This document shows positions 37,611 through 62,414 of a stretch of DNA of 64,000 nt, one piece after another. A program made the position numbers and the translations under genes. A model generated the notes under the pieces. That model saw only the letters and a program-made list of their open reading frames with translations. It was not told the origin of the DNA and ran no database searches. Every line of letters begins with the position of its first letter. The first letter of the stretch is position 1. The stretch lies in the IMG/VR virus record IMGVR_UViG_3300007513_000001, positions 229,410 through 293,409 of that record, one strand, 5' to 3'.

Positions 37611-37982
37611 ATGAAAATCACAAAAAGACAGCTTGGAAGAATTATTAGAGAAGCAATTATAGCCGAAGCCGGTTATGATCAGTTGCCTTTCAAAGATGGT
37701 CAACCATGGCGAGACCCAGACGTTCCATACGACGTGGCTGCAAACCTTCTTCAGCGAGATCTTGAACAAGCTGTTTCTGACGAACTAGATAGAGAGCTTA
37801 CTGACCAAGAAATGGATGATGCTGGTTATTTCGAAGAGGAGAGCTGGCCTTTAAGATTCGGCTATACAGACAAGACCGGTGAAGAAGTCGAGTTCATAGC
37901 CAACAATAGTGCCGATGCAGACGAATTTTTCGCAATGTTCTTTAAAGAATATGGAAGAGACCACCCCTACTCAGTGAATTAG
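37611..37982 (+). CDS. MKITKRQL-leader acidic protein
   Basis: MKITKRQLGRIIREAIIAEA followed by an acidic body. Confidence 0.8.
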   Translation: MKITKRQLGRIIREAIIAEAGYDQLPFKDGQPWRDPDVPYDVAANLLQRDLEQAVSDELDRELTDQEMDDAGYFEEESWPLRFGYTDKTGEEVEFIANNSADADEFFAMFFKEYGRDHPYSVN

Positions 37983-37990
37983 GAATTACA

Positions 37991-38230
37991 ATGAAAGTGA
38001 CAAAACAGCAGTTAAAAGAAATTATCAAAGAATACAAAGAATTATTGCGGCCAGGGCATGTAGATGGCCAACCGTGGAGCGGCACACTAGAAGATCTAGC
38101 GACTGTCCAAAGCAAGACTTGGGGACATGGAGAAGTTGTTGATAAAAAAGGCTACAGAGATATAGTCAACCACGCCAGAGATTTAACAGCTGGAAAAGCA
38201 AAAAGCCCAGTCAGAAAATACGGAAAGTAA
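37991..38230 (+). CDS. MKITK-type leader small protein
   Basis: MKVTKQQLKEIIKEY. Confidence 0.75.
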   Translation: MKVTKQQLKEIIKEYKELLRPGHVDGQPWSGTLEDLATVQSKTWGHGEVVDKKGYRDIVNHARDLTAGKAKSPVRKYGK

Positions 38231-45277: not shown

Positions 45278-45290
45278 CTTTAAAAAGAGG

Positions 45291-46348
45291 GTGCAAGTGA
45301 ACAGTCCAGTAATTCGTCCGCAAGTATTAAAACTCAGAAGCGTCTGGAAGAATGAAGCTACAGATTTTACTCCATGGATGGCTTCCAATGAGGGCATATC
45401 TTGGCTATGCCAGGATCTTGGTATTGAAAGCTTGAAGGTAGAGGGTGTTGAAGTAGATACTGACGAAGGCAAAAGAATTGATATTTTAGCCGCTCTTCCA
45501 AACGGAGATTCCATTGTTATAGAAAATCAATTTAATGCAGCAGACCACAGGCACTTTCACAACATCCAACACTATGCTGTTTCGTCTAATTCTAATACAG
45601 TTATTTGGATTGCAGAATCGTTTCCGAGTCTTTACGTAAAGCTTATTGAATCTATTAACGCTTCTGACTGGATTGACATCGTTGGTGTAGTTGCAAGAGT
45701 TAACTCCGCAGGAGGCCCTCTTCCAACGCTACAGTTTGAAGTGATTTCAGCAAGTGAAGAAGCTCTAGAGAGAATGAAAGGAGACAGTGATGTCGAAGCA
45801 ACCGTTGCAGATAACGACGCTCTTTCCAGTTTCTATAAAGATTATTTTGACCAGCTTAAGCCTGCTTTAGATTCTTATCTTAGGGGCACAACGCCCCACA
45901 AACGAGGCACAAAAAAGAAGTGGCGCAGTTATGCTGAATGGAACTTCGAAAAAGGCGCTTGGATGAAATGGCAAATTTGCTTTAATCAACAGCGAGGCCG
46001 CCCGGGAGAGTATAGGGTTTCAATTCTTTTTAATCATATTGAAGATGAAAAGAATTTGGAGAGACTAAATTACATTAAGCAAAATAAAGATAGCTTGCTT
46101 TCTGGCATCTCGGTAGATTTTGTCGAAGATTGGGATTCTACTGTTGGCTGCCGAGGGCAAAAAGTTCATTTTAAATTTCCGCGTGAAGTTAACTATCGAA
46201 ATATTTCTCCTAGCGATAAAATTGAATTAGTTGATTGGACAAAAGATTTGATGCGTAATATTACGAAAAATGCATCTAATCTGGACATTAAATCGTGCTC
46301 TGGCGCTAATACTTACTCTAAGAATGGAGTAAACAATCATCTTTCTAT

Positions 46349-46358
<10 letters not shown>
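45291..46358 (+). CDS. DUF4268-type PD-(D/E)xK endonuclease-like protein
   Basis: WKNEATDFTPW, RIDILA, IVIENQ, DHRHFHNIQHY; stop codon lies inside tRNA-Asn. Confidence 0.75.
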
Positions 46359-46424
<66 letters not shown>

Positions 46425-46441
46425 TCTTTCGAGGTATATAA

Positions 46442-48031: not shown

Positions 48032-48091
48032 ATTTTATACACTTTTGGTGTTGTGGGTATAGTTTCTTAATCTACGTTTAAGGAGATAAAA

Positions 48092-48391
48092 ATGCTAGAT
48101 AAAATTAAGTCACTTTTGACGAAATACAAGGTACACGTAAGCGTTGTTGGTGGGGCTTTAGTTATTGCTACTGTTTACGGCCAGTGCACTTTAGAGCCAA
48201 ACGTTGAAGCAGTTGAAGAAGCAGTTGAAGAAGCTGCCGATCAAGCAGCTAACTCAACCACGTCTAACGAAGACAAAAAGGTTGAAGCGGCAGCGGCAGA
48301 TGCAGCTATCATGACTGAAGACGCGACTAACGCATCTGAAAATGAAAGTGCTGATACCACTACAGAAGCTACAGAGACTAAAGAAGATTAA
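48092..48391 (+). CDS. small lipoprotein-like acidic protein
   Basis: Hydrophobic N-terminus ending YGQC; A/T/E-rich tail; SD AGGAG. Confidence 0.7.
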   Translation: MLDKIKSLLTKYKVHVSVVGGALVIATVYGQCTLEPNVEAVEEAVEEAADQAANSTTSNEDKKVEAAAADAAIMTEDATNASENESADTTTEATETKED

Positions 48392-48409
48392 AAATAATTA
48401 TGTTTTTTA

Positions 48410-48438
48410 TTGAACAACAGAGTTTTGAAGTTTAAAAT
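48410..48438 (+). promoter_or_regulatory. sigma70-type promoter upstream of the large ncRNA candidate
   Basis: TTGAAC-N17-TAAAAT. Confidence 0.5.
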
Positions 48439-48480
48439 AAAACATAATTTACTAAACGTTCTTTAACATTGCTAATAAAA

Positions 48481-49132
48481 GACCTTAGTTCTTGGGTCTA
48501 CAAACCTGGATGAGATTACCGATCTCCAGGCGCTAGCGAAAGCTGGTGATAGAGAAAACCTCGCTCAGGAAAAAGCTGTTCTTACGGACCTGCCCGCCTG
48601 ACTAAGAGAGGGGATGCGTAAAGGAGGGTGGTACCTCTGAAAATCATCCAGTGATTCGATGCATGGGTTCCCATACCACTGGGAAAATACTGCTGAGAGT
48701 ATCCGCGGACTTGTAGGTTCATCGTGGAAACGGGATAAGGGGACTAACCAAGAAAAAGTCTTGGGAAGAGAGGTTAATACCTTTTAGAATCTAACTGTCG
48801 GTGATAGAAGTCTCTCTGGCGGAATCGGAAACGAGACCGTCGTCCCGAAAGGGGTCGTATGGACATCCTCCCAAGGTTTGGAAATGCGACGCGCAACTAA
48901 GAGGTGAAGTGTACAGCTCACTCAAAGGCGCGCAGAATATCATAATACGACAGTAAGGCGTGCTGTTCCGTAGTCTTACGGCTAAGAACAGGGAGAAAGC
49001 TCGCGAACGGCGTTACTTGCCGGTGTGCTTACATCTAACCCAAAGGGGACAGGCTCAAAAGGCTTGATGATCACGAGCAGAGAGAATAGAAGTGCTAAAA
49101 CTCTCCCCCTTTTTAACAAGACCCGAGAGGGC
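48481..49132 (+). ncRNA. large highly structured ncRNA candidate (~650 nt; ROOL/GOLLD size class or new)
   Basis: No credible ORF, GC-richer than flanks, more than 12 visible helices, several GNRA-capped (CUAGC-GAAA-GCUGG, CGU-GGAA-ACG, UCG-GAAA-CGA, CCC-GAAA-GGG, CCC-GAGA-GGG); lies in the tRNA region. Confidence 0.75.
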
Positions 49133-49144
49133 AAAGAGAAAAAA

Positions 49145-49573
49145 ATGACAGTAGAAATCGGTAGCAAAGTAGTAGTTCATTATAAAGGAACATTAAACAA
49201 CGGTGAAGAATTCGACAGCTCATATTCAAGAAATGAGCCGCTAAGTTTTACCGTAGGAAACGGAGAAACAATCGCGGGTTTTGATTCTGCTGTTGTTGGG
49301 ATGTCTATTGGGGAAGTAAAAAATATTACCCTGAGCCCATCCGAAGGGTATGGGGACGTAAATCCAGAAGCGTTTCAAAAGATTTCAAAGAATCAGTTTC
49401 CGTCAGATTTTGAACCATCAGCTGGCACTTTAGTCGAGGGAATCAATACCCAAGGCCAAAAAGTTAGAGCCATCATTGCAGAAGTTTTTGACGAAGATTT
49501 AGTTCTTGATTTTAATCACCCGATGGCTGGAAAAGAGATGAATTTCGAAATTCAGCTAGTCAACTGCGAATAA
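49145..49573 (+). CDS. FKBP-type peptidyl-prolyl isomerase with insert-in-flap domain (SlyD/SlpA-like)
   Basis: VVVHYKGTL, FDSS, IAGFDSAVVGM, EGYG, LDFNHPMAGK; start moved to ATG 49145. Confidence 0.93.
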   Translation: MTVEIGSKVVVHYKGTLNNGEEFDSSYSRNEPLSFTVGNGETIAGFDSAVVGMSIGEVKNITLSPSEGYGDVNPEAFQKISKNQFPSDFEPSAGTLVEGINTQGQKVRAIIAEVFDEDLVLDFNHPMAGKEMNFEIQLVNCE

Positions 49574-49580
49574 ACAAACT

Positions 49581-49656
49581 GCGGGAGTAGCTCAATTGGT
49601 AGAGCTTCAGCCTTCCAAGCTGATTGTTGAGGGTTCGATTCCCTTCTCCCGCTCCA
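49581..49656 (+). tRNA. tRNA-Gly (TCC)
   Basis: GCGGGAG/CTCCCGC, TCAGC-CTTCCAA-GCTGA, U73, encoded CCA. Confidence 0.97.
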
Positions 49657-49666
49657 TGGAGGTAAA

Positions 49667-49804
49667 ATGGCTAGGGTAAAAATATCAGATTTAGTTCATC
49701 AACAAAAGATTCTTGAAGACAAAATTAAGAAGATACAAATTGTTCTTTGGTCTACTGTTTTGTTTGTTGCAGTTTTTGGATATAAAGTATTGTTTGCCGT
49801 TTAG
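49667..49804 (+). CDS. 45-aa single-TM protein (not in ORF track)
   Basis: ATG after GGAGG; MARVKISDL...IVLWSTVLFVAVFGYKVLFAV. Confidence 0.6.
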   Translation: MARVKISDLVHQQKILEDKIKKIQIVLWSTVLFVAVFGYKVLFAV

Positions 49805-49814
49805 GGGAGACTTA

Positions 49815-50045
49815 ATGAAGACTTTAGTTAAAAAAGGGTCGATAGCCTATCTTAGTCACACTGGTCATAAAGGATTCAGGTATCCATCAAAAGATTCAGA
49901 AAAACTTCTTTTTGATGTAGAGGCTGAGCGAGTTTCTTGGGTTGGCGGTGGAGAAAAATTGACTCCCGTCAAAATTCCAGAATCATCAATTTTAGCTTTG
50001 GGAGATTCTGAAAAATCTGTCGTAGTTTGGGTTCATAAAAATTGA
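49815..50045 (+). CDS. small hypothetical protein
   Basis: ATG after GGGGAG. Confidence 0.65.
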   Translation: MKTLVKKGSIAYLSHTGHKGFRYPSKDSEKLLFDVEAERVSWVGGGEKLTPVKIPESSILALGDSEKSVVVWVHKN

Positions 50046-50077
50046 ACATCTAGCTATTTTAGTTAGAATTAATTTAT

Positions 50078-50154
50078 GCGCCCGTAGCTCAGCTGGATAG
50101 AGCAACGGCCTTCTAAGCCGTGGGCCGCAGGTTCGAATCCTGCCGGGCGTGCCA
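50078..50154 (+). tRNA. tRNA-Arg (TCT)
   Basis: GCGCCCG/CGGGCGT, ACGGC-CTTCTAA-GCCGT, TTCGAAT, encoded CCA. Confidence 0.97.
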
Positions 50155-51487: not shown

Positions 51488-51516
51488 AAAATGCACCGAA
51501 CATTCGGTGCATTTTT
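51488..51516. terminator. intrinsic terminator, symmetric
   Basis: AAAATGCACCGA-ACAT-TCGGTGCATTTT(T). Confidence 0.85.
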
Positions 51517-51623: not shown

Positions 51624-53498
51624 ATGGGTAAAGTTATTGGAATTGATTTGGGCACGACAAATTCGTGCGTGGCTGTAGTCGAGGGTACAAACCCTATAGT
51701 TATAGCTAATGAAGAAGGAAGCAGAACAACTCCTTCCGTTGTGAGCTATAATGATACCGGAAGACTAGTAGGAATAGCAGCTCGTAGACAAGCTATCGTT
51801 AACCCCGAATCTACCGTGTATTCTGTGAAGCGTTTTATGGGAATGAGATTTGACGAATCTAAAACAGAGGTCGAAAAAGTTCCTTACGAAATAGTTTCTG
51901 GAGATAGCGGAGAGTGCCGAATAAAAATTAAAGATAGCAAACTGTCTCCTTCTGAAATATCAGCGCAGATTTTAACTAAGCTAAAGAGGAGTGCTGAAAG
52001 ATATTTAGGCACGACTGTAGACGAAGTCGTTATTACAGTACCAGCTTATTTTAATGACTCACAGCGTCAAGCAACTAAAGATGCTGGAAAAATTGCTGGG
52101 TTAGAAGTTAAAAGGATCATTAACGAACCGACAGCTGCAGCTTTAGCTTACGGCATGGATAAAGCTGGCGAGCAAAAGGTTGCTGTTTTTGACTTGGGCG
52201 GTGGTACATTTGATATCTCAATTTTAGAAATATCAGATGGAGTTGTCGAAGTTTTGAGCACGAATGGAGATACTCACCTTGGGGGCGACGACGTAGATCA
52301 ACTTTTGATTGATTGGCTATTTAAAACTTTTGAGGCGGACACCGGAATAGATCTTTCTAAAGATAGCATGGTTATTCAAAGGCTTAGAGAAGCAGCTGAA
52401 AAAGCTAAAATAGAGCTCTCTACAGCGCAGCAAACTGAAATCAATCTTCCCTTCTTGACAGCTGACGCGACCGGTCCGAAACATCTAACTGCGAATTTGA
52501 CAAGATCAAAGTTTGAACAAATGATAGATTCTTTTGTTCAAAATACACTGGTTCCGGTTAAAAATGCGCTCGAAGATGCAAATATTGCCAAAGAAGAAAT
52601 TGATGAAGTGATTCTTGTTGGAGGGTCTACTAGAATTCCAGCTGTTAGAGATAGAGTTGAGAAGTTTTTCGGCAAAACTGCAAATAGTTCGGTTAATCCA
52701 GACGAAGTTGTTGCTCTTGGAGCAGCAGTGCAGGGAGGCGTATTTTCAGGAGACGTTAATGACGTGCTTCTTCTTGACGTTACCCCCTTATCTTTGGGCA
52801 TTGAAACCTTGGGAGGTGTAACAACATTTTTAATTAATCGAAACACCACGATTCCAACTTCTAAATCAGAAACCTTCAGCACGGCAACAGATAATCAGCC
52901 AGCGGTTGATATACACGTCTTGCAGGGAGAGAGAAAGTTTTCTAAAGACAACAGAACTCTTGGAAATTTTCAATTAGCTGGCATCCCTCCAGCTCCTCGA
53001 GGTTTACCACAAATCGAGGTAACTTTTGATATCGACGCGAATGGTATTTTGTCAGTTTCTGCAAAAGACAAAGCTACTGGAAAAGAGCAGAGTGTAAGAA
53101 TCGAAGGCCAATCTGGGCTTTCAGATAGTGATATATCTGATATGATTAAAAATGCCGAGGCTGCTGCAGAAGAAGACGAAAAGAAGTTTAAGGTTATAGA
53201 AGAAAGAAATAAGTTAGACACTCTTGTATACCAAGCTCAAAAAGCAATGAAAGAAAATCAAGACAACATGACGGAAGATTCTAAATTTTCTCTTGGGGAA
53301 TTTATTATCGCTGCCGAAAGTGCTTTAGACAGCGATAGTTTAGATGAGCTTAACCTAGCGTTTAATAATTTGCAGTCTAAGCTTCATGAAATAAGTTCAG
53401 AACTTTACCAATCGTCAACTACCGCTGAAGATTCTAGCGACACGAGCGATGATTCAGGTGATATTATAGACGCTGATTTTGAAGATGTTGACTCTTGA
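51624..53498 (+). CDS. dnaK: Hsp70 chaperone DnaK
   Basis: [69 protein letters not shown] tail. Confidence 0.98.
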
Positions 53499-53542: not shown

Positions 53543-54373
53543 ATGCGCTTTTTAAAAGAATACATTTCTCAAGTTTTAAAAGAAGCTACGAAATTACCAG
53601 ACGATTTTTATAAACCTTTAGAAAGCGCCATCGCATCATCTCAGTTTTGGACTTTTGCCAACGGTCCGGAAGACGCAGATTTCAATCGGGTCGGCGGAGA
53701 AGATGTAGACCAGACAGAAGCCGCAGAAGTTTTAGGGTACGCTCTTTTAGATTTTTTTAGATCTATAAAATATCCTCTTATACCTCTCGTAAGGTCTCCC
53801 GATGTCGGAGTAAAAGGTAACGATAAATTCTTGGTGGGAAAAGGTCACCGATATTATCCAGACAAGATTGTTGCTGGTGGACAAATGGGTTTGACTGATA
53901 CGGGTAGGAGAATTCTGTATCTAGACCTGATGGTTTATGATGAAGATATCGACACAAACGATATTTCTGCTAATTCTGTAGTTTCAGACGTCGCTTCAGT
54001 TGTAAGACATGAATTAATTCATGCAGATCAATATGATAAAAGAGCTAAAAAACAGAAGACAACGAGAGTAAAAGCTAAAAAAGCTTATGAGGAAGATGGA
54101 AGTATTGTAACTTCAGATGACAGACACCAATATCTTTCTTCGCACATCGAAATCGATGCATATGCTCATGAATTTGCAGAACAGTTGCTTCAAGATTTCG
54201 GTTTAGAAAGGGCGCTACAGTTAATAAGAACTTCTAACAAGGCAGAAGACTTGCCGGTTTCAGATCAATTAGAAGAATATCTAAAGGGGATATCAAGCAA
54301 AAAAGCTTTTAGAAATCTGATGGGAAAAGTTTACACTCAAATAATGGATTTAAAAGATAGAAAAATTTATTAA
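53543..54373 (+). CDS. leader-bearing zincin-like metalloprotease
   Basis: MRFLKEYISQVLKEA leader; RHELIHADQY (HExxH) and EIDAYA. Confidence 0.65.
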   Translation: MRFLKEYISQVLKEATKLPDDFYKPLESAIASSQFWTFANGPEDADFNRVGGEDVDQTEAAEVLGYALLDFFRSIKYPLIPLVRSPDVGVKGNDKFLVGKGHRYYPDKIVAGGQMGLTDTGRRILYLDLMVYDEDIDTNDISANSVVSDVASVVRHELIHADQYDKRAKKQKTTRVKAKKAYEEDGSIVTSDDRHQYLSSHIEIDAYAHEFAEQLLQDFGLERALQLIRTSNKAEDLPVSDQLEEYLKGISSKKAFRNLMGKVYTQIMDLKDRKIY

Positions 54374-54454: not shown

Positions 54455-55099
54455 ATGCAGCTAGTCAGAAAATATGTAAGAGCTCTTTTAATAGAGCAGC
54501 TAGAAGCGGAGCTTCAAACACCCTCTACGGGAGTCCCAAAAGGCGTTTGGACACTACTTCAGCCAGGTAGCCCAGAGTTTGAACAAGCTAGAATAGAACT
54601 AAATGATTTGATCACCATGGCTTATTCGAACATTGGCGGTCATTTAAAGATAACTAGTCCCGAAAGTTTGAACAGATATCAATTTTGGGTCGTCCAAGAT
54701 TTAGATGACGACGACCAAATAGATGTAGCCCTCTTTGGCAAGCCTGATATTGGTGGAAACAAACTTGGAGGAATAGGGCATGATGGATCTAGTGCTGCGA
54801 AGTCTGCATATAAAAACAAATCTGCAGAGCTTCGTTCTGGTGGAGAAGTAGCAGGAGTTGGAAATTGGTGGGGTGAAGTTAGTGGAAAAGCTGCATATGC
54901 AGTTTTGTCTCGTGGCGCACCCGCAATTACCGACGAAGCTCATGTCCGAACTCTTCTTGCTGGCGACCTTATCGTTTGGCACGGGATGCACCCAGATCCT
55001 GATGCTCCACCACTGTTTAAAGCTAACCCCGGATGGTACACTAAGACTTTTAGAGATGGTTCTGAACATACAAAAATAATAGCTGGGAGCCCGACGTGA
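54455..55099 (+). CDS. leader-bearing hypothetical protein
   Basis: MQLVRKYVRALLIEQ leader. Confidence 0.75.
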   Translation: MQLVRKYVRALLIEQLEAELQTPSTGVPKGVWTLLQPGSPEFEQARIELNDLITMAYSNIGGHLKITSPESLNRYQFWVVQDLDDDDQIDVALFGKPDIGGNKLGGIGHDGSSAAKSAYKNKSAELRSGGEVAGVGNWWGEVSGKAAYAVLSRGAPAITDEAHVRTLLAGDLIVWHGMHPDPDAPPLFKANPGWYTKTFRDGSEHTKIIAGSPT

Positions 55100-55344
55100 A
55101 AATCACAAAACTCCAACTCAGAAGAATAATTGCAGAAGCTATCGACTTAGATATCGAAAAGGGCGACGTTATTCTTACAGGAAGATTTAAAAATAAGAGA
55201 ACTATTGTAAAAGATATCGGAGTAGACGATTTAGGTCAACCCACTATTAATGGAATGAAAGTCCTGAATTTTAGAATTGAAAAACTTATGCCCAAAGATA
55301 AATGGAGCCAAAAATCTAAAGAAGCTCTTAAGGATAAAAAATGA
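55096..55344 (+). CDS. MKITK-leader small protein with SH3-like body
   Basis: MKITKLQLRRIIAEA; GDVILTGRFKN. Confidence 0.8.
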   Translation: MKITKLQLRRIIAEAIDLDIEKGDVILTGRFKNKRTIVKDIGVDDLGQPTINGMKVLNFRIEKLMPKDKWSQKSKEALKDKK

Positions 55345-55646
55345 GAATTACAAAACTGCAGCTTAAAAGAGTGATAAGAGAAGCTATAAACGAAAGCCAG
55401 TGGCAAGACAATATAGATGATTTTCTTTCTGACCGCGAAGCTAATCCTCACGATGGAGGCATGTACGGCGAAGATGAAGAAGACCGAAAATGGAGTGAAG
55501 CCGAATACGACCGCGGCTACCAGGACGGCTATGATGCTCTTCCACCCGCCGGCGACGCCTCAGCAGATTACGATGTGGGCTACGAAGACGGGAACAACGA
55601 TGGCAACGCTGAATCAGAGCGTGATTATGAAATGGGGTACAGATAA
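55341..55646 (+). CDS. MKITK-leader highly acidic protein with YxxGYxxG repeats
   Basis: MRITKLQLKRVIREA; YDRGYQDG, YDVGYEDG, YEMGY. Confidence 0.8.
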   Translation: MRITKLQLKRVIREAINESQWQDNIDDFLSDREANPHDGGMYGEDEEDRKWSEAEYDRGYQDGYDALPPAGDASADYDVGYEDGNNDGNAESERDYEMGYR

Positions 55647-55949
55647 ATGAAAATTACAAAGAGACAAATCAGAAGAATTATTAGAGAAGAGAAGCGAAAG
55701 GTCTTACGAGAGGGTATTACCCAAGAAGAGGCTTTGGCCGTCGCTATCCAAGACTACGTTATAGCGCTCCAAGACCAGATGGACTTCGACTCCGTCCAGG
55801 ACTTCCTACCAGATGTTATTGGTCAAGTCGAGGATTGGTTTGCAAATGAAGCTATCGCAGAAGAGTTCGCTGATGGCGAGAGCGGTGAATACGACCTTGA
55901 TCCGAATGATCAAGCATATGCTGCCGGTCGGCCATGGGAGCATAACTAA
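55647..55949 (+). CDS. MKITK-leader acidic protein
   Basis: MKITKRQIRRIIREE..VLREG. Confidence 0.8.
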   Translation: MKITKRQIRRIIREEKRKVLREGITQEEALAVAIQDYVIALQDQMDFDSVQDFLPDVIGQVEDWFANEAIAEEFADGESGEYDLDPNDQAYAAGRPWEHN

Positions 55950-55950
55950 A

Positions 55951-56352
55951 ATGAAAATCACGAAAAGACAGCTTAGAAGAATTATTAGAGAAGAGCTAGA
56001 TTACGGCGAGTTTCAGAGAGATCCAGAAGTTCAAGCGGCTCTACAAGCCGCAGGATTTAATCAAGACGGCAGCTTTGGAATGGAAGGCTATCCTGGACCA
56101 AGCGATTGGCAACTATACTCCCCGGAAAATATGGAGCAAGCCGAAAGGTGGATTGATGCTGCTATTGCAATGAATGATGCATTACGAAAAGCCGAAACTG
56201 CTTTAGACCGCGGCGAATATAGCTCAGCCCAAGATGCCTGGTATGATATAATTTATCCAGTGCAAAAAGAATATAGTGATACCGGGGCAGCCGATACAGA
56301 GGGCAGAGAGGTCGCCGGTGACTGGTTAGAACAAGCGGGATTTTCGTGGTAA
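55951..56352 (+). CDS. MKITK-leader acidic protein
   Basis: MKITKRQLRRIIREE; start moved from 55813. Confidence 0.8.
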   Translation: MKITKRQLRRIIREELDYGEFQRDPEVQAALQAAGFNQDGSFGMEGYPGPSDWQLYSPENMEQAERWIDAAIAMNDALRKAETALDRGEYSSAQDAWYDIIYPVQKEYSDTGAADTEGREVAGDWLEQAGFSW

Positions 56353-56353
56353 A

Positions 56354-56644
56354 ATGAAAATTACAAAAAGAAAACTCAGAAGAATTATCCGGGAAGAAAA
56401 AGAACTTCTTTTAAAAGAAGCAATTAAATTTCCGTGGGGCGAAACTGACCCAGAATATCCTGACGATAATGCTGTATTACCACCGACTAGAAAAATAGAA
56501 TTTAAGTGGGGGCCAGGTGGCTTGGAAATGGAAATGCGTATGAACGGAGAGAAAATTCTTGGTTTTACGCGGCAATCACAAGTCGACGAATTAATTGAAC
56601 AACTAGAGGGTCTACTTGCTGGACCAATGAGGACATCACCATGA
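56354..56644 (+). CDS. MKITK-leader protein
   Basis: MKITKRKLRRIIREE..LLKEA. Confidence 0.8.
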   Translation: MKITKRKLRRIIREEKELLLKEAIKFPWGETDPEYPDDNAVLPPTRKIEFKWGPGGLEMEMRMNGEKILGFTRQSQVDELIEQLEGLLAGPMRTSP

Positions 56645-56922
56645 AAATCACAAAAAGACAACTCAGAAGAATCATCAAAGAAGAAAGACGGCTCTTAAAA
56701 GAGCAGGGTGATCCTATCGCTGACCAGCTTCTTGGAGATTTCGTTACAGATTTAGCTAGTGGGCTAATGGATATGTATGATCCCCAAGACGCAAATCGAG
56801 TTGGATCTGAAGAAGATTTTTATGAAGCAGTAACGACAATAACAGTTGAGGTAGAAGACCTTGTACGCCAGCGATTAAATGATTTATGGTCTGGCGATTT
56901 AAAACTAGAGCTAATGAAATGA
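56641..56922 (+). CDS. MKITK-leader acidic protein
   Basis: MKITKRQLRRIIKEE..LLKEQ. Confidence 0.8.
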   Translation: MKITKRQLRRIIKEERRLLKEQGDPIADQLLGDFVTDLASGLMDMYDPQDANRVGSEEDFYEAVTTITVEVEDLVRQRLNDLWSGDLKLELMK

Positions 56923-57134
56923 AAATCACAAAAAGACAACTCCGGCGCCTGATTAAAGAAGTTCTACAAGAAGATAAGTCTGGGAAAGGAGCTTGCCCAG
57001 ATTCCGGGTGCATTAAGAAAAGTGGCGATGATTGGAGAATTATCAGTAACAAAACTGGTAAAATGTGGCCACAGAAATACAAAACGAGAAAAAGCGCAGA
57101 AAATGCGCTAGACGCTTATCATGCGAGTAGATGA
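56919..57134 (+). CDS. MKITK-leader basic protein
   Basis: MKITKRQLRRLIKEVLQE; ATG overlaps upstream TGA. Confidence 0.8.
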   Translation: MKITKRQLRRLIKEVLQEDKSGKGACPDSGCIKKSGDDWRIISNKTGKMWPQKYKTRKSAENALDAYHASR

Positions 57135-57166: not shown

Positions 57167-59938
57167 ATGTTATCAATTAATGGAATACCGATCAAGATCA
57201 AAGTAGCTCGAGACGACAAATCTCGAGCTCATGGTCTTATGGGGGTAAAGAGTATGCCGGAAAACGAGGGTATGCTTTTCGTTTTTTCAGAGTCGAAACC
57301 TAGATCTTTTTGGATGAAAGATACTCTGTTTCCGCTTTCTATTGCTTACATTGACGAAGACCATAAGATTATCAACATTGAAGACATGAAGCCACACGAT
57401 ACTTCTAGTGTTGTCTCTGCTTCACCCGCGATATGCGCATTAGAAATGAACCGAGGGTGGTTTAGAAACAACGGCATCCGACCGGGAGACGCTGTTGACG
57501 GAATCAAAAGGGTTTATAGTGAATCTATTTTAAGGAAATCTATTAGACTATTGTTGAGAGAATCATCTACACCCACACGAACTTCATTTGATATTCCTAT
57601 ACCTGCTGATTTAAAAGATATTCATTCACGAATTAAGTACGCGGGTCGAGAATTATTTTTAGTTGGTGGTGCTGTTCGAGATGCGCTTATGGGTAAAACC
57701 CCTAAAGATTATGACGTAGCAACAAATGCGAGTCCTGAAGCCGTTATAAAAATATTGCAAAAAGATCCAAGTCTTAGGTTAGATTTAACTGGTAAACAGT
57801 TTGGAGTAGTGAGAGTAAAAACTAGTGACGGTGGAGAATACGAAATAGCTACTTTTAGAGAAGACATAGGAAAAGGTAAGTCTACAAAGGTAAAATTTTC
57901 TACGATTGAAAACGATGTTAAAAGAAGAGATTTAACAATTAATGCGCTGTTCTACGATATGGATTCTAAAGAAATCGTAGATTATGTCGGCGGAATTGAA
58001 GACATTGAAAACGGAATAATCCGAGCAGTAGGAAACCCAACTCAAAGATTTGACGAAGATAGAATTAGAATTTTGAGAGCCGTCAGATTTGCTGGGAGGA
58101 TGGGATCAAATTTAGACCCGCAAACTAAGCAAGCTATTTTAGACGACAACAAACTAATAGATACGGAAACTGGTCAGCAGATACCAGCTGATAGAATCAC
58201 TGAAGAGTTTGTAAAAGGGATAAAGTCAGCGCAAGATCCCGTTGGGTTTTTAGCTACTATAAATGACCTCGGTCTTTTTGATCAAATTTTGCCAGGCTTA
58301 GAGCTGAATTTTAGTACTTCTGGAACAACTGACCACATAGCTCAATTGGCTGCGTTGTTAAATAATAATTCTACAGATTCTATATCTTCGACTTTAAAAA
58401 GAATGAGATATTCTAACGATGAACGGAATATCATTAATTTTTTAATTAGTTTTGGAAATATTAATCGAGACACTGCTCCAGCGCTTAAAAAAGATTTCAA
58501 GCGCTACAAGATACCAGAAAGTCATTTAATAGAATATGCAGCGGCTTCAGACAGCCTTTCACAAAATAAACTGGATTCGTTTCTGCAGTTTGCTTCTGAG
58601 CCACCAGCTGGAAACTCTAAAGAATTAATGGCTAAAGGAATCAAAGGGCGAGATCTTGGTGTTGCTCTTGCCGCAGCAGAGGGAGATGCTTTTGCGAAGT
58701 TGATTGGCGAGTCAGTAATCGTTAGGCTTTTGACGGAAGCCGCCAAAGGACCACAAGATCTGCCTGACGGAATATTTGTACAGATCAAGCCCGACGATTG
58801 GGGCGTTCGAGTCGCTTATGTAAACAAGCTCAATAATGTGCTCTCGATGGAAGCTGACATTCGGGGCGTAGTTATGGTAGAAAGGCTTTCAGAAGATGAT
58901 ACGGATTTAGGGCCGTGCGACGACGCATGGATGATCGGATCTTCAGAGGCAGCCCCTGGTTGGGGCCCAATGCTTTACGATGTTGCTATGGAATATGCTA
59001 CTATGAAAGGCGGCGGGCTTATGGCAGATCGAGGTTCAGTCTCTCCAAAGGCTCGTAATGTGTGGGACTATTACATGAATAATCGCGGTGACGTTACAGG
59101 AATCCAGATGGATGACCGCAAAAACACTCTCACACCAGAGGAAGAAGATAATTGTAGCCAAAAGGTTGCCGGTCTTGACAATCGGTCACAACAGGATAAG
59201 TCGAAGCTATCCCCAGCCGGCACTTACAAGACAGATTGGGTTGACTCTCCTTTAAGCAAACGCTGGACAAAACCACCCACCACCATCGAGGCTTTAAGAG
59301 CTGCAGGCAAACTCGTCTGGCATGAAGCGGGCGATCATCTTCCACTCAGAGATTTGGATGCAGAAGGTCCAATCTTGCACTTGGAAAATTTCGTGAAAGA
59401 AATATTAAAAGAAGAAACTTTTAGAATTCTAATACCGAGCCCTCCTTCTGAAAAAGAAAGGTTAAAAGAGCTTCCATACGTAGTTCAAAAAAATCAAAAT
59501 CCGAGCTTTAGCCCAGAGATTTTGAAGACGTTAGATAAGAGAGTTTCAAAGTTATTTAATTTTTTAATAGTGAGCGCTGGATATCCGGACGTTTTTGAAA
59601 GAATAAAAGAAACAAAAAACAGCATAAAACCAATTATCAAGTTTCACAAAAATTATTTTGATTGTCTCCGACCAGATGAATTAGCGGATTCTTATGGGCT
59701 AGATTTTCCTGTTAGCTATTTGGACAGTGCGCAGAGTCCGTCTTATCCTTCGGGTCATACAACCCAAGCGTTTTACTTAGCACATGTTTTGGCAAGTGAA
59801 TATCCAGAAATTTCAGAAGATTTTTATAATTTAGCTCAAATGGTGGCCGACTCTAGAATAGAACATGGGGTGCATTTACCTTCAGACAATGAAGCGGGAA
59901 AACTTCTTGCAAAAACTATATACGGGTGGGAAGTTTAA
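57167..59938 (+). CDS. cca: four-domain fusion: DUF192 + CCA-adding enzyme + GNAT-like domain + PAP2 phosphatase
   Basis: GLM..EGMLF..FWMKDT..PLSIAYI..ALE (DUF192); VGGAVRD..KDYDVAT, EIATFR, RRDLTINA, FDEDRIRILRAVRF (class II CCA); GWGPMLYD..SVSPKARNVW (GNAT-like); K..RP, PSGH, SRIEHGVHLPSD (PAP2). Confidence 0.88.
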   Translation: MLSINGIPIKIKVARDDKSRAHGLMGVKSMPENEGMLFVFSESKPRSFWMKDTLFPLSIAYIDEDHKIINIEDMKPHDTSSVVSASPAICALEMNRGWFRNNGIRPGDAVDGIKRVYSESILRKSIRLLLRESSTPTRTSFDIPIPADLKDIHSRIKYAGRELFLVGGAVRDALMGKTPKDYDVATNASPEAVIKILQKDPSLRLDLTGKQFGVVRVKTSDGGEYEIATFREDIGKGKSTKVKFSTIENDVKRRDLTINALFYDMDSKEIVDYVGGIEDIENGIIRAVGNPTQRFDEDRIRILRAVRFAGRMGSNLDPQTKQAILDDNKLIDTETGQQIPADRITEEFVKGIKSAQDPVGFLATINDLGLFDQILPGLELNFSTSGTTDHIAQLAALLNNNSTDSISSTLKRMRYSNDERNIINFLISFGNINRDTAPALKKDFKRYKIPESHLIEYAAASDSLSQNKLDSFLQFASEPPAGNSKELMAKGIKGRDLGVALAAAEGDAFAKLIGESVIVRLLTEAAKGPQDLPDGIFVQIKPDDWGVRVAYVNKLNNVLSMEADIRGVVMVERLSEDDTDLGPCDDAWMIGSSEAAPGWGPMLYDVAMEYATMKGGGLMADRGSVSPKARNVWDYYMNNRGDVTGIQMDDRKNTLTPEEEDNCSQKVAGLDNRSQQDKSKLSPAGTYKTDWVDSPLSKRWTKPPTTIEALRAAGKLVWHEAGDHLPLRDLDAEGPILHLENFVKEILKEETFRILIPSPPSEKERLKELPYVVQKNQNPSFSPEILKTLDKRVSKLFNFLIVSAGYPDVFERIKETKNSIKPIIKFHKNYFDCLRPDELADSYGLDFPVSYLDSAQSPSYPSGHTTQAFYLAHVLASEYPEISEDFYNLAQMVADSRIEHGVHLPSDNEAGKLLAKTIYGWEV

Positions 59939-59939
59939 G

Positions 59940-62414
59940 ATGACTGTGTTACGTGATCACATAAGAGCGCTGCTTGCGGAAGAAACAAAAGCATCCCGTG
60001 CAGTTCCGGAACTGGGCCTCTGGTTACCTAAAAACTTTAACGATCTCATAGAAAAGAAATACCCAGCCTATGCAATCCCAGATGAAGAGTGGGACGAAGG
60101 GTCTATTTCTTGGTGGATGCATGCAGAGTCGATCGAGGACGCGTGGCAGAAGAGAAATCAAGAAATTTCTGGCGACAAAACAATGGCCGTAGCAAAGACT
60201 GCATCCGGTGTTGGTGGTGGCATGACCGGTGTGGGTATCAGCGGCCTCCTCTACGCTGGTGGCCTCATCGTCGACGCTCTTGGCGGCGGCGGTATGGCAT
60301 CGCTTGCTTTAAAACTGCTTGGAGCCAAGGGCATTTTTCTTTCGATCGGCCATGAAGCCCTTAAAAAAGGTGGGTTTGATACCAAGCTAAGGCGAGAATT
60401 TCAGAAAGAAATTAGGTGGGATGAAAATCTTCTAAAAGGTATAAAAGAATCTGAGGCAGAGGCAGTCGAAAATGCTTACATGGAGTATTTTTGGGATATG
60501 ATTAAAAATAAGCCTCACGCGCACTTTGGGGTGGAGTTCGAAGACATAAACGATTTTTACCTGAGGACATCAGAAAGTGATATGCTACAGCCGACTGGAA
60601 CGAGGAAAGTTCGTGTGCCATCTCAGGACGAAAAAGATCTAGCTAAGCTTATAGCCACAAACCCTTCTGCTGGTGCTTCAAATAGGTTAAGGGGTCGTGA
60701 CTCGAGAGAAGCCCAAGCAGGAATGAGACAATTGTCGCAGAATGAACTGCGGAAATATATTCGTTCCCTACTAAGTGAATCCACCCAATACGACGATCAC
60801 TTCAAGCCGCTCATGGATTCTGGTTATGACGGTATCAAGCAAGCAATAGAATTAGCAGATAGTCTCGGTATGTCGCCTCGAGAATTACCGTGGAATGATG
60901 ATACGTTAAACGCTTATTTGTTTTATGCTCCAGGTGAAGATACACTTGAAAAGCTGACCAAAATTGGCTGGACTACCGAAGAATGGGTAGAACAGGGCCG
61001 AAGAGCTTTTGAAGACCGTGAGAGAGAATTAGGCTTGCGGGAATCAGCTGATTATGACGATGATTATTCATCTTCAATGGAGGCCATGCTTGCAATGCTG
61101 GTCGTTGATCAAGCTCAGGATAATGGAGCCGAACAGGCATTGATGATGTTTGAACCAATGGCATTGAGTGATGATCCAGAATATCAATTAGATCTAGATT
61201 TGTTAGCAGCAGAAATTTCTCAGAGATTGCAGCCCCATACAGAAAAATACCAGAAATATGATGGCGTGGACAAGTTCGGTGTTCTGCTTGTGTGGCAATC
61301 TACCGTAGATGAGATAATCAAATTTGTAACTGGAGATGGCATCAACCGAAGCTTTCGGCCTTCTTGGAAATCTTTCGAAAGAGAGGAAGATGTATCAGAA
61401 ATGCTGGGGCCAGTGTTAAGGCAAACAGTGACTGCGTGGAAAAAGAAAGAGCAAGGCAAGCCTGCAATGGCAGACCACGAGGAAGAGTGGGTTGTTCGCG
61501 AGTGTGTAAGAAGAATATTGACAGAGCAGATTAATTCAGTTTTAGACAAGATCGTTAAGCTTGTTGAGACAGGTCATGGAAATCAAGCTTTCGAAATCAT
61601 GGTTATGATGCCAGAAGAATTAGACACGGCCATGGTGATCACTACACTTCGAAAAGAATTAGCTAATTTACGCGCCATAACACGATCACCAGAGCCACAC
61701 CAGTGGGCTTACTCTAGATATAGAAAAAAGCTTCCTGATCCAGAGTGGGATAAGTTTGTTAAGTTTGCCCGTGGCTTTTCTGATTTTATCGGTTACCAAG
61801 GAAGTATGCTCGATCCGAATAATCATAACCCTCAACATCGGGCGCGCCCGCGCGATCCACTTGCCAAAACACATGACAGGTGGCCTTCAGCCGAAGATAT
61901 GATACAGATGCTACAGCAAAAAATTGGCGGTGAGACTATTAAAGAAGCAGCACGCCCGAACTATGTAACTGGCCATGGAATATTTGATGATCGGAGCCCA
62001 ACTGAAAATGAAAAGAAATTACTTGATGTGTTTGTTGGAAGTGGCGCCCAGGCTTTGGAGTTAGCTGAATTAACTGGCCACGATGAGCTAGCATCTTGGA
62101 TGCACAAGATAATAGATCCCATCCGTGAGAGAATTAAAACAATTGAAGATACAGTGGCGCTTATACAGTCTGATGAAATTACAGAGCGATGGAAGATAGA
62201 AGATATTTCGATAAAACTTGAAAATGAGGCTGAAGAAATACTTCGTGGCTACTATCCGTCAAGCAAGCTACACGACAGCTGGGAAGACAGTGTATTCGAA
62301 ATGGCGGATTATATTTGGTACCACGGTGTAGATTACGATAGCTACAACGTCGCCTCAGAAACCAAGTCAAAACAAGACTTAGACAAGATAAAGATGTGGG
62401 CAGGTGTCGCATGA
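59940..62414 (+). CDS. multi-module polyprotein-like ORF of leader-separated helical modules
   Basis: MTVLRDHIRALLAEE leader; internal LRKYIRSLLSES, LGLRES, VRECVRRILTEQ, TIKEA; start moved from 59865. Confidence 0.8.
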   Translation: MTVLRDHIRALLAEETKASRAVPELGLWLPKNFNDLIEKKYPAYAIPDEEWDEGSISWWMHAESIEDAWQKRNQEISGDKTMAVAKTASGVGGGMTGVGISGLLYAGGLIVDALGGGGMASLALKLLGAKGIFLSIGHEALKKGGFDTKLRREFQKEIRWDENLLKGIKESEAEAVENAYMEYFWDMIKNKPHAHFGVEFEDINDFYLRTSESDMLQPTGTRKVRVPSQDEKDLAKLIATNPSAGASNRLRGRDSREAQAGMRQLSQNELRKYIRSLLSESTQYDDHFKPLMDSGYDGIKQAIELADSLGMSPRELPWNDDTLNAYLFYAPGEDTLEKLTKIGWTTEEWVEQGRRAFEDRERELGLRESADYDDDYSSSMEAMLAMLVVDQAQDNGAEQALMMFEPMALSDDPEYQLDLDLLAAEISQRLQPHTEKYQKYDGVDKFGVLLVWQSTVDEIIKFVTGDGINRSFRPSWKSFEREEDVSEMLGPVLRQTVTAWKKKEQGKPAMADHEEEWVVRECVRRILTEQINSVLDKIVKLVETGHGNQAFEIMVMMPEELDTAMVITTLRKELANLRAITRSPEPHQWAYSRYRKKLPDPEWDKFVKFARGFSDFIGYQGSMLDPNNHNPQHRARPRDPLAKTHDRWPSAEDMIQMLQQKIGGETIKEAARPNYVTGHGIFDDRSPTENEKKLLDVFVGSGAQALELAELTGHDELASWMHKIIDPIRERIKTIEDTVALIQSDEITERWKIEDISIKLENEAEEILRGYYPSSKLHDSWEDSVFEMADYIWYHGVDYDSYNVASETKSKQDLDKIKMWAGVA
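60783..60893 (+). repeat. 37-codon module duplicated at 63456..63566
   Basis: TQYDDHFKPLMDSGYDGIKQAIELADSLGMSPRELPW vs TEYDSHFKPLMDSGFDGIKQAMELADSLGITSQELPW (29/37 identical). Confidence 0.9.

What the first reader, a model, noticed from the sequence alone, without database searches (positions are those of the whole stretch)
55096..57134. Seven-cassette array: conserved ~45-bp gene heads, unrelated and mostly acidic bodies
Seen: each gene starts (a/g)tgaaaat(c/t)ac(a/g)aa.a...ca.ctcagaagaat.at...gaa, with stop/start overlaps or 0-1 nt gaps; several bodies are very D/E- and aromatic-rich, one has YxxGYxxG repeats. Known: acidic DNA-mimic proteins (Ocr, Arn) inhibit restriction and other DNA-binding defences; the T4 ip1 locus is hypervariable. 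Inference: the leader DNA doubles as a recombination anchor for a swappable anti-defence cassette array.
Basis: partly seen in the sequence, partly recalled or inferred. Interest (0 to 1): 0.68.

Follow-up and report, generated by a model that had tools for sequence, protein, structure and literature searches.

The report
Leader-tagged cargo gene arrays, jumbo phage
Seven back-to-back small genes in a 293-kb marine T4-like phage share a 14-residue N-terminal tag that looks like a capsid-loading, protease-cleaved signal on unrelated, mostly acidic proteins, in a much larger and differently built version of phage T4's injected "internal proteins".

Summary
At 55096-57134 seven abutting genes each start with MKITK(R/L)QLRRII(R/K)E, and their bodies show no BLAST similarity to one another. 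The window belongs to a 293,409-bp T4-like jumbo phage with 31 such genes: a 22-gene array, one pair, and this array. A looser form of the tag, M-x-LLREYIRxLLxE, heads larger proteins and also sits at module joints inside two long ORFs next to the array.

About 50 related marine viral contigs carry 479 more tagged ORFs. Together they fall into 218 body families, and shared families appear in different orders in different phages.

The phage encodes a T4 gp21-type prohead protease. The tag ends in that protease's I/L-x-E motif in 97% of copies, and the capsid protein has a similar site where T4's is cut. My best explanation (confidence about 0.55) is a capsid-targeting propeptide on cargo that is packed and injected, as with T4 IPI-III and Alt. 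The arrays are probably reshuffled by recombination between the ~45-nt leader DNA.

Packaging, cleavage and any anti-defence activity are all untested. Unlike the basic T4 IPs, these bodies are mostly acidic. I rate it a new variant of a known kind.

The parts
55096..55344 (+). Cassette 1 (82 aa, GTG start). Leader at 55096-55137. Basic body predicted as a small beta-barrel. The most conserved cassette.
   Evidence: Homologues in 9 distinct relatives at 64-77% whole-protein identity. AF2 gives helix 5-17 plus 5 strands at pLDDT 67. A homologue of the body without the leader occurs in huge phage LR756502.
55341..55646 (+). Cassette 2 (101 aa). Leader MRITKLQLKRVIRE. Body has 31% D+E with GY/DG repeats.
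   Evidence: Partial homologues in L067, L032, L054 and L117.
55647..55949 (+). Cassette 3 (100 aa). Extended leader with a second h-h-x-E motif ending at residue 22. Acidic body.
   Evidence: Weak homologues in L058 and L117.
55951..56352 (+). Cassette 4 (133 aa). Acidic, 14% aromatic residues.
   Evidence: 80% identical orthologues in L068 and L093, where the neighbours are different.
56354..56644 (+). Cassette 5 (96 aa). Extended leader (second motif ends at residue 22).
   Evidence: Homologue in L062, directly upstream of a cassette-1 orthologue.
56641..56922 (+). Cassette 6 (93 aa). Extended leader. Acidic body.
   Evidence: 23 full-length homologues at 54-82% identity in marine metagenomes. 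In L117 and L118 the orthologue is flanked by other cassettes.
56919..57134 (+). Cassette 7 (71 aa). Basic body with a C-x5-C motif.
   Evidence: Homologues in L059 (directly upstream of a cassette-1 orthologue) and L082.
37611..37982 (+). Lone leader cassette (123 aa, acidic), 17 kb upstream of the array.
37991..38230 (+). Second lone leader cassette (79 aa, basic; leader MKVTKQQLKEIIKE).
53543..54373 (+). 276-aa protein headed by the variant leader MRFLKEYISQVLKE. Contains an HExxH motif.
   Evidence: No Pfam or PHROG family.
54455..55099 (+). Roughly 214-aa protein. Its likely true start is the ATG at 54455, which gives the variant leader MQLVRKYVRALLIE.
   Evidence: Orthologue in L016, placed after cassette 1 rather than before it.
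57167..59938 (+). 923-aa multi-module ORF: DUF192, then a poly(A) polymerase / CCA-adding-type nucleotidyltransferase, then a module of unknown function, then PAP2. Leader-like linkers lie at 57524-57562, 58712-58738 and 59387-59416.
   Evidence: Pfam. Linker positions. In L014 the nucleotidyltransferase is a separate gene starting with the full leader. The third module is 45% identical (E 1e-32) to a stand-alone leader-headed protein at genome 2495-3184.
59940..62414 (+). 824-aa ORF starting with the variant leader MTVLRDHIRALLAE. A second, internal leader-like site lies at 61491-61526.
   Evidence: No Pfam family.

Best explanation
The seven genes belong to a large class of cargo proteins of an uncultured marine T4-like jumbo phage. 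Each carries a basic, amphipathic 14-residue N-terminal propeptide, MKITKRQLRRII(K/R)E.

Proposed mechanism:
1. The propeptide docks the protein onto the scaffolding core while the prohead assembles, as a capsid-targeting sequence does.
2. The phage's gp21-type prohead serine protease cuts after the invariant Glu of the I-I-x-E motif. About 30% of copies have a second motif 8 residues further on.
3. The mature bodies stay in the head and enter the host cell with the DNA. There they act early, plausibly against host defences or on host physiology.

Larger proteins use a looser form of the same tag. These include an ADP-ribosyltransferase-like protein, a CCA-adding-type nucleotidyltransferase, a PAP2 phosphatase module, a GNAT-like protein and an HExxH protein. 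In some ORFs these modules are strung together with the tag as the linker, which fits cleavage into separate products.

Because every cassette begins with about 45 nt of near-identical DNA and the genes abut, recombination between leaders deletes, duplicates or exchanges whole cassettes in frame. This would account for the very diverse, reshuffled arrays.

Shown: the repeat, its strict N-terminal position, its spread across the clade, the protease and T4-type head genes, and the shuffling. Inferred: docking, cleavage, packaging, injection, and what the bodies do.
For: 1. T4-type head machinery. The genome has Peptidase_S77 (gp21) at 171474-172085, 84.7 bits against a cut-off of 27. It has two gp23-type capsid genes and, by position and size, a terminase and a portal just upstream. 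All five large leader-bearing relatives also encode S77.

2. The tag ends in the gp21 motif. An h-h-x-E motif ends at residue 14 in 421 of 435 tagged proteins and again at residue 22 in 128 of 435. Background is 4-5% per 12-residue window. Glu14 is present in 416 of 426 relatives. T4 propeptides fetched here end IAE|A (ipII, ipIII) and ITE|A (ipI). Alt is cut at ITE-6 and LTE-619 (PMC5694885).

3. The capsid protein has VLRE|A at residues 58-62, within a few residues of the position aligned to the T4 gp23 maturation site.

4. The general motif occurs 38 times on the + strand against 1 for its reversed control. It sits exactly 2 residues after a start codon in all but a few cases. The exceptions are in-frame internal sites.

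5. A head-module gene just downstream of the protease gene (one gene between) starts MAKISKSMLKGIVKE.

6. Cargo of the Alt kind. The protein at genome 1340-1954 has invariant R, S and E-x-E residues. Its roughly 45 best structure matches are nearly all ADP-ribosyltransferases or ART-like folds, Z 5-7.2 over 100-117 residues. Its leader-like motif lies just ahead of the domain.

7. The tag is modular. Unrelated bodies form 218 families. A homologue of one body exists without the leader in another phage. An enzyme that is separate and leader-headed in L014 is fused behind a leader-like linker here.

8. Selection acts on the protein. Identity at codon position 3 is 0.61, against 0.78 and 0.82 at positions 1 and 2.

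9. Precedent. Reviews describe T4 IPs as a diverse set of injected defence-countering proteins that share only a capsid-targeting sequence (PMC3012670; PMC9026906).
Against: There is no experimental or proteomic evidence that any of these proteins is in a virion or is cleaved.

The leader has no detectable similarity to the T4 capsid-targeting sequence: the leader HMM scores below 0 on ipI-III.

T4 IPs are basic, with pI 8.9-9.5 (PMC9026906). Here 67% of bodies have pI below 5. Strongly acidic cargo beside packed DNA is not the T4 pattern.

I/L-x-E is a short motif and could be part of an amphipathic helix for other reasons.

A complex prediction of the protease with a leader gave no answer and counts neither way.

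The 'scaffold' and 'core' genes near the protease are named by position only. PHROGs found nothing for them.

Thirty-one or more cargo species per genome would be far more than in T4.
Confidence: 0.55

Rival explanations
1. The leader is a protein-level tag or module with a job other than head loading. It could be a shared handle for a common partner such as the phage's own DnaK or GroEL, the membrane, nucleic acid or a host factor. It could also be a basic helix that masks the acidic body until it is removed. The proteins would then act inside the infected cell and would not be packaged.
For: The leader is strongly basic (net +5 to +6) on mostly acidic bodies. AF2 predicts it as a helix. The phage encodes DnaK and GroEL near the array. 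There is no sequence similarity to the T4 capsid-targeting sequence. The number of tagged genes is unusually high for capsid cargo.
Against: This reading does not explain why the tag ends in the protease motif in 97% of copies, with a second phased copy in 29%. It does not explain why the tag recurs as a linker between modules of long ORFs. It does not explain why a head-module gene just downstream of the protease gene carries it. All genomes with the tag have the S77 protease.
Confidence: 0.2
2. The conserved 45 nt works mainly as nucleic acid. It would be a recombination anchor comparable to PeSL elements, or an A-rich element that restarts translation for tightly coupled genes lacking Shine-Dalgarno sites. 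The peptide would be a passenger.
For: Between genomes the leaders are nearly the only DNA of the array that still matches, at 80-97% identity. Synonymous codons are skewed well beyond body usage across the whole clade: Thr4 ACA 72% against 27%, Arg9 and Arg10 AGA 81-89% against 25%, Glu14 GAA 93% against 57%. Genes overlap or abut without obvious ribosome-binding sites. In metagenome contigs, depth piles up at the leaders and the flanks on both sides are diverse. PeSL-mediated shuffling is established in T4-like phages (PMC4122927).
Against: Third codon positions still vary more than first and second positions. The hydrophobic and charged pattern and Glu14 are kept through codon changes. The LLREYIR variant keeps the same residue pattern with different DNA. 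Internal in-frame copies occur without a start codon. A DNA role can coexist with the peptide role, so this is better seen as a second layer than as a replacement.
Confidence: 0.12
3. This is an ordinary paralogous gene family. The N-terminus is conserved only by descent from tandem duplications, and the bodies have diverged beyond recognition.
For: The arrangement is tandem. Some cassettes share an extended similarity up to about residue 24.
Against: There are 218 body families, 142 of them singletons, of very different length, charge and predicted fold. The leader heads recognisable, unrelated enzymes. One body family exists without the leader elsewhere. Identity drops abruptly from 0.72 to 0.28 at the leader's end.
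Confidence: 0.05

Closest known systems
Phage T4 internal proteins IPI, IPII and IPIII with their capsid-targeting sequence (CTS)
   Same: Small, mutually unrelated proteins of a T4-type phage that share only a 10-19-residue N-terminal propeptide. The propeptide begins MK and ends I-x-E. T4 IPs are loaded onto the prohead core, trimmed by gp21, injected with the DNA, and encoded in a hypervariable locus. IPI* blocks GmrSD restriction.
   Different: The leader sequence is unrelated and strongly basic. Bodies are mostly acidic where T4 IPs are basic. There are 31 genes per genome in long arrays, against three in T4. The tag is also used on enzymes and as an internal linker. Nothing has been shown experimentally.
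T4 Alt, the packaged and injected ADP-ribosyltransferase
   Same: A protein with an R-S-ExE ADP-ribosyltransferase-like fold lies in the same genome region and has a leader-like motif ahead of the domain. Alt is cut by gp21 at ITE-6 and LTE-619.
   Different: There is no detectable sequence similarity to any Pfam ART family. The protein is much smaller, about 150 residues of domain. Its target is unknown.
PeSL (promoter-early stem-loop) elements of T4-like phages
   Same: Short conserved DNA repeats flanking variable genes, thought to drive cassette insertion, deletion and exchange by homologous recombination. The same idea was raised earlier for the T4 IP locus (PMC4122927).
   Different: PeSLs are intergenic promoter-terminator units. 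Here the repeat lies inside the coding sequence and encodes a conserved peptide, and the intergenic space is 0-4 nt.
Ejection (inner-body) proteins of phiKZ-like giant phages such as SPN3US and 201phi2-1
   Same: Jumbo phages pack many different proteins whose propeptides are removed after Glu by a gp21-related protease. Redundant cleavage sites occur within the propeptides.
   Different: Those propeptides are long (often more than 100 residues) and not shared between proteins. Their motif is S/A/G-x-E. Those phages are not T4-like in the rest of the head module.
Cargo-loading peptides of encapsulins and encapsulation peptides of bacterial microcompartments (from my own knowledge, not tested)
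   Same: A short amphipathic helix at a protein end that is enough to load unrelated cargo into a protein shell.
   Different: Those systems are not viral, the peptide is not removed by a maturation protease, and there are no cassette arrays.

Membership tests
T4-type internal proteins (CTS-tagged capsid cargo) | Encoded by a phage with a T4-type prohead: gp23-type capsid protein, portal, gp21 (S77) protease and a scaffolding core | tested here: met
   PF03420 at 84.7 bits. PF07068 at 212 bits, twice. PDB hits to T4 gp23 at E 4e-29. Gene order terminase, portal, unknown gene, protease, small ORFs, 562-aa acidic ORF, capsid protein. The scaffold is identified by position only.
T4-type internal proteins (CTS-tagged capsid cargo) | A short (10-20 residue) N-terminal propeptide shared by otherwise unrelated small proteins | tested here: met
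   31 genes share a 14-residue leader, and their bodies give no BLAST hits to one another. There are 479 more tagged ORFs in relatives.
T4-type internal proteins (CTS-tagged capsid cargo) | The propeptide ends in the gp21 cleavage motif (I/L)-x-E | tested here: met
   I-I-x-E ends at residue 14 in 421 of 435 proteins. T4 ipI-III read here end IAE or ITE.
T4-type internal proteins (CTS-tagged capsid cargo) | The leader is homologous to the T4 CTS (MKTYQEFIAE) | tested here: not met
   The leader HMM scores below 0 on T4 ipI, ipII and ipIII. The resemblance is one of function only.
T4-type internal proteins (CTS-tagged capsid cargo) | Basic, DNA-associated mature proteins | tested here: not met
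   278 of 418 bodies have pI below 5. In this array 5 of 7 are acidic. T4 IPs have pI 8.9-9.5.
T4-type internal proteins (CTS-tagged capsid cargo) | Present in the virion, N-terminally processed, and injected | not testable with these tools
   The phage is uncultured and no proteomic data are available. The complex prediction gave no answer.
T4-type internal proteins (CTS-tagged capsid cargo) | Encoded in a hypervariable locus that differs between related phages | tested here: met
   Cassette order and content differ in every relative examined.
Acidic DNA-mimic anti-restriction proteins (Ocr, Arn, ArdA) | Sequence or fold membership in a known DNA-mimic family | tested here: not met
   No Pfam or PHROG family at permissive thresholds for any of the seven. 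The only fold I predicted (cassette 1, which is basic) has no significant PDB match. The acidic bodies were not folded.
Acidic DNA-mimic anti-restriction proteins (Ocr, Arn, ArdA) | A surface charge pattern that imitates B-DNA, and inhibition of a DNA-binding defence | not tested
   Only bulk composition was measured: 19-31% D+E, pI about 4.1.
PeSL-type recombination cassettes | An intergenic promoter plus stem-loop repeat flanking variable genes | tested here: not met
   The repeat is coding and the genes abut. No + strand terminator-like site lies within the array, and promoter-like sites are not above shuffled expectation.
R-S-ExE ADP-ribosyltransferases (neighbouring cargo gene at genome 1340-1954, outside the window) | ART fold with conserved Arg, Ser and Glu-x-Glu | tested here: met
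   R60, S107, E160 and E162 are invariant in 5 homologues. The best structure matches are nearly all ARTs or ART-like folds, Z 5-7.2, and Foldseek probabilities reach 0.99. Z below 8 makes this moderate support only. There is no Pfam hit.

The most novel reading that the evidence does not exclude
A clade of marine T4-like jumbo phages may have turned the capsid-targeting-sequence principle into a general loading system. One 14-residue cleavable tag would load dozens of different proteins per virion, drawn from a pool of more than 200 families. The cargo would be mostly small acidic proteins but also enzymes: an ADP-ribosyltransferase-like protein, a CCA-adding-type nucleotidyltransferase and a phosphatase module, some made as polyproteins with the tag as the linker. 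The tag's own DNA, kept uniform at synonymous sites, would serve as the recombination site that exchanges cassettes between phages. That would resemble an integron in which the attachment site is the signal peptide, and it would point to hundreds of candidate injected effectors in ocean viromes.
Probability: 0.3. Interest if true: 0.82.

Novelty: new variant of a known kind. Interest (0 to 1): 0.64.

Why it matters
If the tag is a capsid-loading and cleavage signal, then a simple sequence rule picks out the injected cargo of a widespread group of uncultured ocean jumbo phages. The rule is M-K-I-T-K-R-Q-L-R-R-I-I-x-E at the N-terminus. It would mark hundreds of otherwise uncharacterised proteins as likely first-minute effectors, including possible anti-defence factors.

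It would also show that the T4 internal-protein strategy can grow to about 10% of a genome's genes, accept acidic cargo and enzymes, and use polyproteins.

The tag could be useful in practice. T4's own capsid-targeting sequence is already used to pack foreign proteins into heads.

The arrays also offer a clean natural test of whether a coding repeat can act as a recombination anchor for cassette exchange.

Tried and rejected
- **Body annotation.** Pfam and PHROG scans of the seven bodies, their neighbours and ten large tagged proteins from relatives gave nothing above threshold. The only hint was a sub-threshold PARP match on L032:1718-2749.
- **Genome identity.** Megablast of the region against the phage collection gave no match.
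- **Pelagibacter myophages.** Hits to HTVC008M and Mosig looked promising but were chance matches. Neither locus has the leader.
- **T4 late promoter.** TATAAATA occurs 8 times on each strand and is not placed before the arrays. I dropped it as a timing clue.
- **Protease-leader complex.** The prediction of the S77 protease with the first 40 residues of cassette 4 scored 0.02 against a mark of 0.34. The verdict was 'no answer', so it is not evidence either way.
- **Cassette 1 structure.** The AF2 model has pLDDT 67. Foldseek found nothing at E<=0.001; the weak top rows are small ribosomal beta-barrel proteins.
- **Protein atlas.** A look-up of cassette 4 returned only unnamed viral clusters scoring below 0.8.
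- **Metagenome contigs.** Only Logan contigs were available. The listed contigs from 3 studies match the genome with 0-2 differences and show the same arrangement, though no contig spans the whole array. The many 'joints' between leaders have short sides (22-47 nt) that fit several leaders, so I did not count them as recombinants.
- **RNA.** Rfam found no RNA family in the array.
- **Literature.** Full-text searches for the leader peptide strings found nothing relevant.
- **Genetic code.** Only code 11 was used.
Full report
**The observation**

The stretch 55096-57134 holds seven + strand ORFs of 71-133 codons. Their first ~49 nt form one repeat family of seven copies, spaced 245-403 nt. A degenerate version of the head matches 7 times in the window against 0 in 100 shuffles. 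Neighbouring genes overlap by 4 nt or are 0-1 nt apart.

Mean pairwise nucleotide identity is 0.72 over the first 45 nt and 0.28 both upstream and downstream. The bodies give no BLASTP hit to one another. Five of the seven are acidic (pI 4.1-4.7) and two are basic.

**The wider setting**

The window is the last 64 kb of a 293,409-bp IMG/VR virus record. Its 'terminal repeat' is only a 38-bp overlap, so the two ends are contiguous.

A leader HMM finds 31 clear copies, all on the + strand. Twenty-two form an array at genome 47.6-57 kb, two sit at window 37611 and 37991, and seven are the array in question.

A looser residue pattern, M-x-h-h-[KR]-x-x-h-[KR]-x-h-h-x-E, occurs 38 times on the + strand (39 on both strands) against once for its reversed control. 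With few exceptions it begins exactly two residues after a start codon. This pattern covers a second flavour of the tag, M-x-LLREYIRxLLxE, which heads larger proteins. These are the two ORFs just upstream of the array (53543 and 54455), the 824-aa ORF downstream (59940), and several proteins at genome 1.9-4.3 kb, which adjoin the window's end.

The pattern also sits inside long ORFs at module joints. In the 923-aa ORF at 57167-59938 it separates DUF192, a poly(A) polymerase / CCA-adding-type nucleotidyltransferase, an unknown module and PAP2. Two observations show these joints are real module boundaries:
- In relative L014 the nucleotidyltransferase is a separate gene that begins with the full leader.
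- The third module is 45% identical to a stand-alone, leader-headed protein at genome 2495-3184.

**What kind of phage this is**

The genome encodes a T4 gp21-type prohead protease, Peptidase_S77, at 84.7 bits. It has two 86%-identical gp23-type capsid genes. By position, a terminase and a portal lie directly upstream.

The nearest cultured capsid proteins are only 37-47% identical: Microcystis phage Mel-JY01 and Flavobacterium 'immuto' phages. The window also carries DnaK, GroEL, asparagine synthase and four tRNAs.

**Why I read the leader as a capsid-targeting propeptide**

T4 loads its internal proteins and Alt onto the prohead core through 10-19-residue N-terminal propeptides. The gp21 protease then removes them after Glu in an I/L-x-E context. 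Reviews describe the mature IPs as a diverse set of injected proteins that counter host defences and share only this targeting sequence (PMC3012670; PMC9026906; PMC5694885). I fetched T4 ipI-III: they begin MKTYQEFIAE|A or MKTF...ITE|A.

The leader here has the same general form:
- **End motif.** Across 435 distinct tagged proteins from this genome and its relatives, an h-h-x-E motif ends at residue 14 in 421 and again at residue 22 in 128. Elsewhere in the proteins it appears in only 4-5% of 12-residue windows.
- **Capsid protein.** It shows VLRE|A at residues 58-62, close to the position that aligns with T4's maturation cut.
- **Head module.** A small gene just downstream of the protease gene (one gene lies between them) begins MAKISKSMLKGIVKE.
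- **Alt-like cargo.** A neighbouring gene (genome 1340-1954) has a leader-like motif ahead of a domain with invariant Arg, Ser and Glu-x-Glu. Its best structural matches are nearly all ADP-ribosyltransferases or ART-like folds, Z 5-7.2. This parallels T4 Alt.
- **Co-occurrence.** Every large relative that carries the tag also carries the protease.

None of this shows cleavage or packaging. It is a consistent set of sequence-level coincidences. The complex prediction gave no verdict.

**Is the conservation at the peptide or the DNA level?**

Both, in layers. Codon position 3 is less conserved (0.61) than positions 1 and 2 (0.78 and 0.82), and the residue pattern survives many synonymous changes. 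So the peptide is under selection.

Synonymous choice is nevertheless far from body usage across the whole clade. Thr4 is ACA in 72% of copies against 27% in bodies. Arg9 and Arg10 are AGA in 81-89% against 25%. Glu14 is GAA in 93% against 57%. Between genomes the leaders are almost the only array DNA that still aligns, at 80-97% identity.

This second layer could reflect recombination or gene conversion among leaders. It could equally reflect selection on the translation start region of tightly coupled genes. I cannot separate these two possibilities.

**Are the cassettes swapped?**

Yes, between phages. An exact-pattern scan found the leader in 79 stretches from about 50 viral contigs of up to 288 kb. 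These hold 479 tagged ORFs with a median length of 101 aa.

Clustering the bodies of 502 tagged proteins gives 218 families, 142 of them singletons. Families present in this array turn up elsewhere in other orders and other company:

| Cassette (family) | Where seen | Arrangement |
|---|---|---|
| Cassette 2 (24) | L032 | directly upstream of cassette 1 (family 1) |
| Cassette 5 (42) | L062 | directly upstream of cassette 1 |
| Cassette 7 (35) | L059 | directly upstream of cassette 1 |
| Cassette 4 | the L016/L093 phage | elsewhere in the genome |
| Cassette 6 | L117 | between a cassette weakly similar to one in the 47.6-57 kb array and a cassette-3 homologue |
| Cassette 6 | L118 | between unrelated cassettes, next to glutamine synthetase and ThyX |

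Relatives L015-L018 have a single cassette where this genome has seven.

There are also traces of events at leaders. Two cassette pairs in the 47.6-57 kb array are fused in frame; in one pair the internal leader begins with ATC instead of ATG. In L016 some ORFs end with leader-like remnants.

Within this strain I saw no variation. The listed contigs from three studies match with 0-2 differences and keep the same order. No contig spans the whole array, because contigs break at the leaders. Depth there rises 10- to 500-fold, with diverse flanks, which shows how common the tag is in these communities.

**What the bodies do**

This is unknown. No body matched a Pfam or PHROG family. I did not run the PADLOC library.

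Cassette 1 is the conserved member. Nine distinct relatives carry it at 64-77% whole-protein identity. It is predicted as a leader helix followed by a small beta-barrel, at low confidence. A leaderless homologue occurs in an unrelated huge phage. Cassette 6 has 23 homologues in marine metagenomes.

As a class the bodies are acidic: 67% have pI below 5, against 23% of other small ORFs in the genome. This is the opposite of T4's basic IPs. It is compatible with the DNA-mimic idea but does not test it.

**Comparison with what is known**

Functionally the closest system is the T4 IP/CTS/gp21 system. The arrays meet four of its sequence-level criteria: a T4-type head, a shared short propeptide, the I-x-E ending, and a hypervariable locus. 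They fail two: homology to the T4 targeting sequence, and basic charge.

For the DNA-level shuffling the closest concept is the PeSL element, together with the older proposal of shuffling within the T4 IP set. Here, however, the repeat is coding.

I found no paper describing this leader.

**Verdict**

The feature is real and spans a whole phage clade. It is best explained as a greatly expanded and differently built version of T4's capsid-targeted cargo system (confidence about 0.55).

Noticed in passing
window 57167-59938: One 923-aa ORF joins DUF192, a poly(A) polymerase / CCA-adding-type nucleotidyltransferase, an unknown module and a PAP2 phosphatase, with leader-like peptides at the joints. 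Relatives split the same modules differently: L014 has a separate leader-headed nucleotidyltransferase, and L016 has DUF192 as its own gene ending in a leader remnant.
   Followed up: partly
window 45200-50154: Four tRNA genes: Met, Asn, Gly and Arg(TCT). tRNA-Arg(TCT) reads AGA, the codon used for 36 of 40 Arg residues at leader positions 9 and 10. The phage also encodes a CCA-adding-type enzyme.
   Followed up: no
window 53543-54373: The 276-aa leader-variant protein contains an HExxH motif (HELIH). Its L014 counterpart has HELEH. This could be a zinc metallopeptidase, but it has no Pfam or PHROG family.
   Followed up: no
genome 1340-1954 (L021), outside the window: A 204-aa protein with invariant R-S-ExE residues and an ADP-ribosyltransferase-like predicted fold (Z up to 7.2). 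A leader-like motif sits at residues 35-46, preceded by about 30 further conserved residues.
   Followed up: yes
genome 176269-180150 (L023): Two tandem gp23-type capsid genes are 86% identical. Their N- and C-terminal thirds are identical and they differ in the middle (residues ~120-350). They may be hexamer and vertex paralogues, or alternative shell proteins.
   Followed up: partly
genome 73936-75003 (L115); L016 5970-7202: A tubulin/FtsZ-like protein with GGGTG-type signatures, 80% identical between two of these T4-like jumbo phages.
   Followed up: no
genome 49106-49897 and 50981-51760 (L022): Two cassette pairs in the large array are fused in frame. One internal leader begins with ATC instead of ATG, so the leader can sit inside a longer protein.
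   Followed up: partly
window 25373-26992, 51624-53498, 46442-48031 and 833-2278: The phage encodes GroEL, DnaK, an asparagine synthase and a protein with the helical domain of 5-hmdU DNA kinase. The last hints at thymidine hypermodification of its DNA.
   Followed up: no
window 18178-19833 (- strand): One of the few genes on the minus strand encodes Ig-like (HYDIN/VesB-like, ASH) domains plus a von Willebrand A domain.
   Followed up: no
window 51488-51515: A strong terminator-like hairpin (12-bp stem followed by a T run) lies just before dnaK. No + strand terminator-like site follows until 58226, beyond the array. So dnaK, the two variant-leader genes and the seven cassettes may form one transcript.
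   Followed up: no
genome ends (1-38 and 293372-293409): The record's 'direct terminal repeat' is only 38 bp of exact overlap, which looks like an assembly closure. The leader-protein region therefore runs continuously from window ~53.5 kb across the record's end to genome ~4.3 kb.
   Followed up: yes
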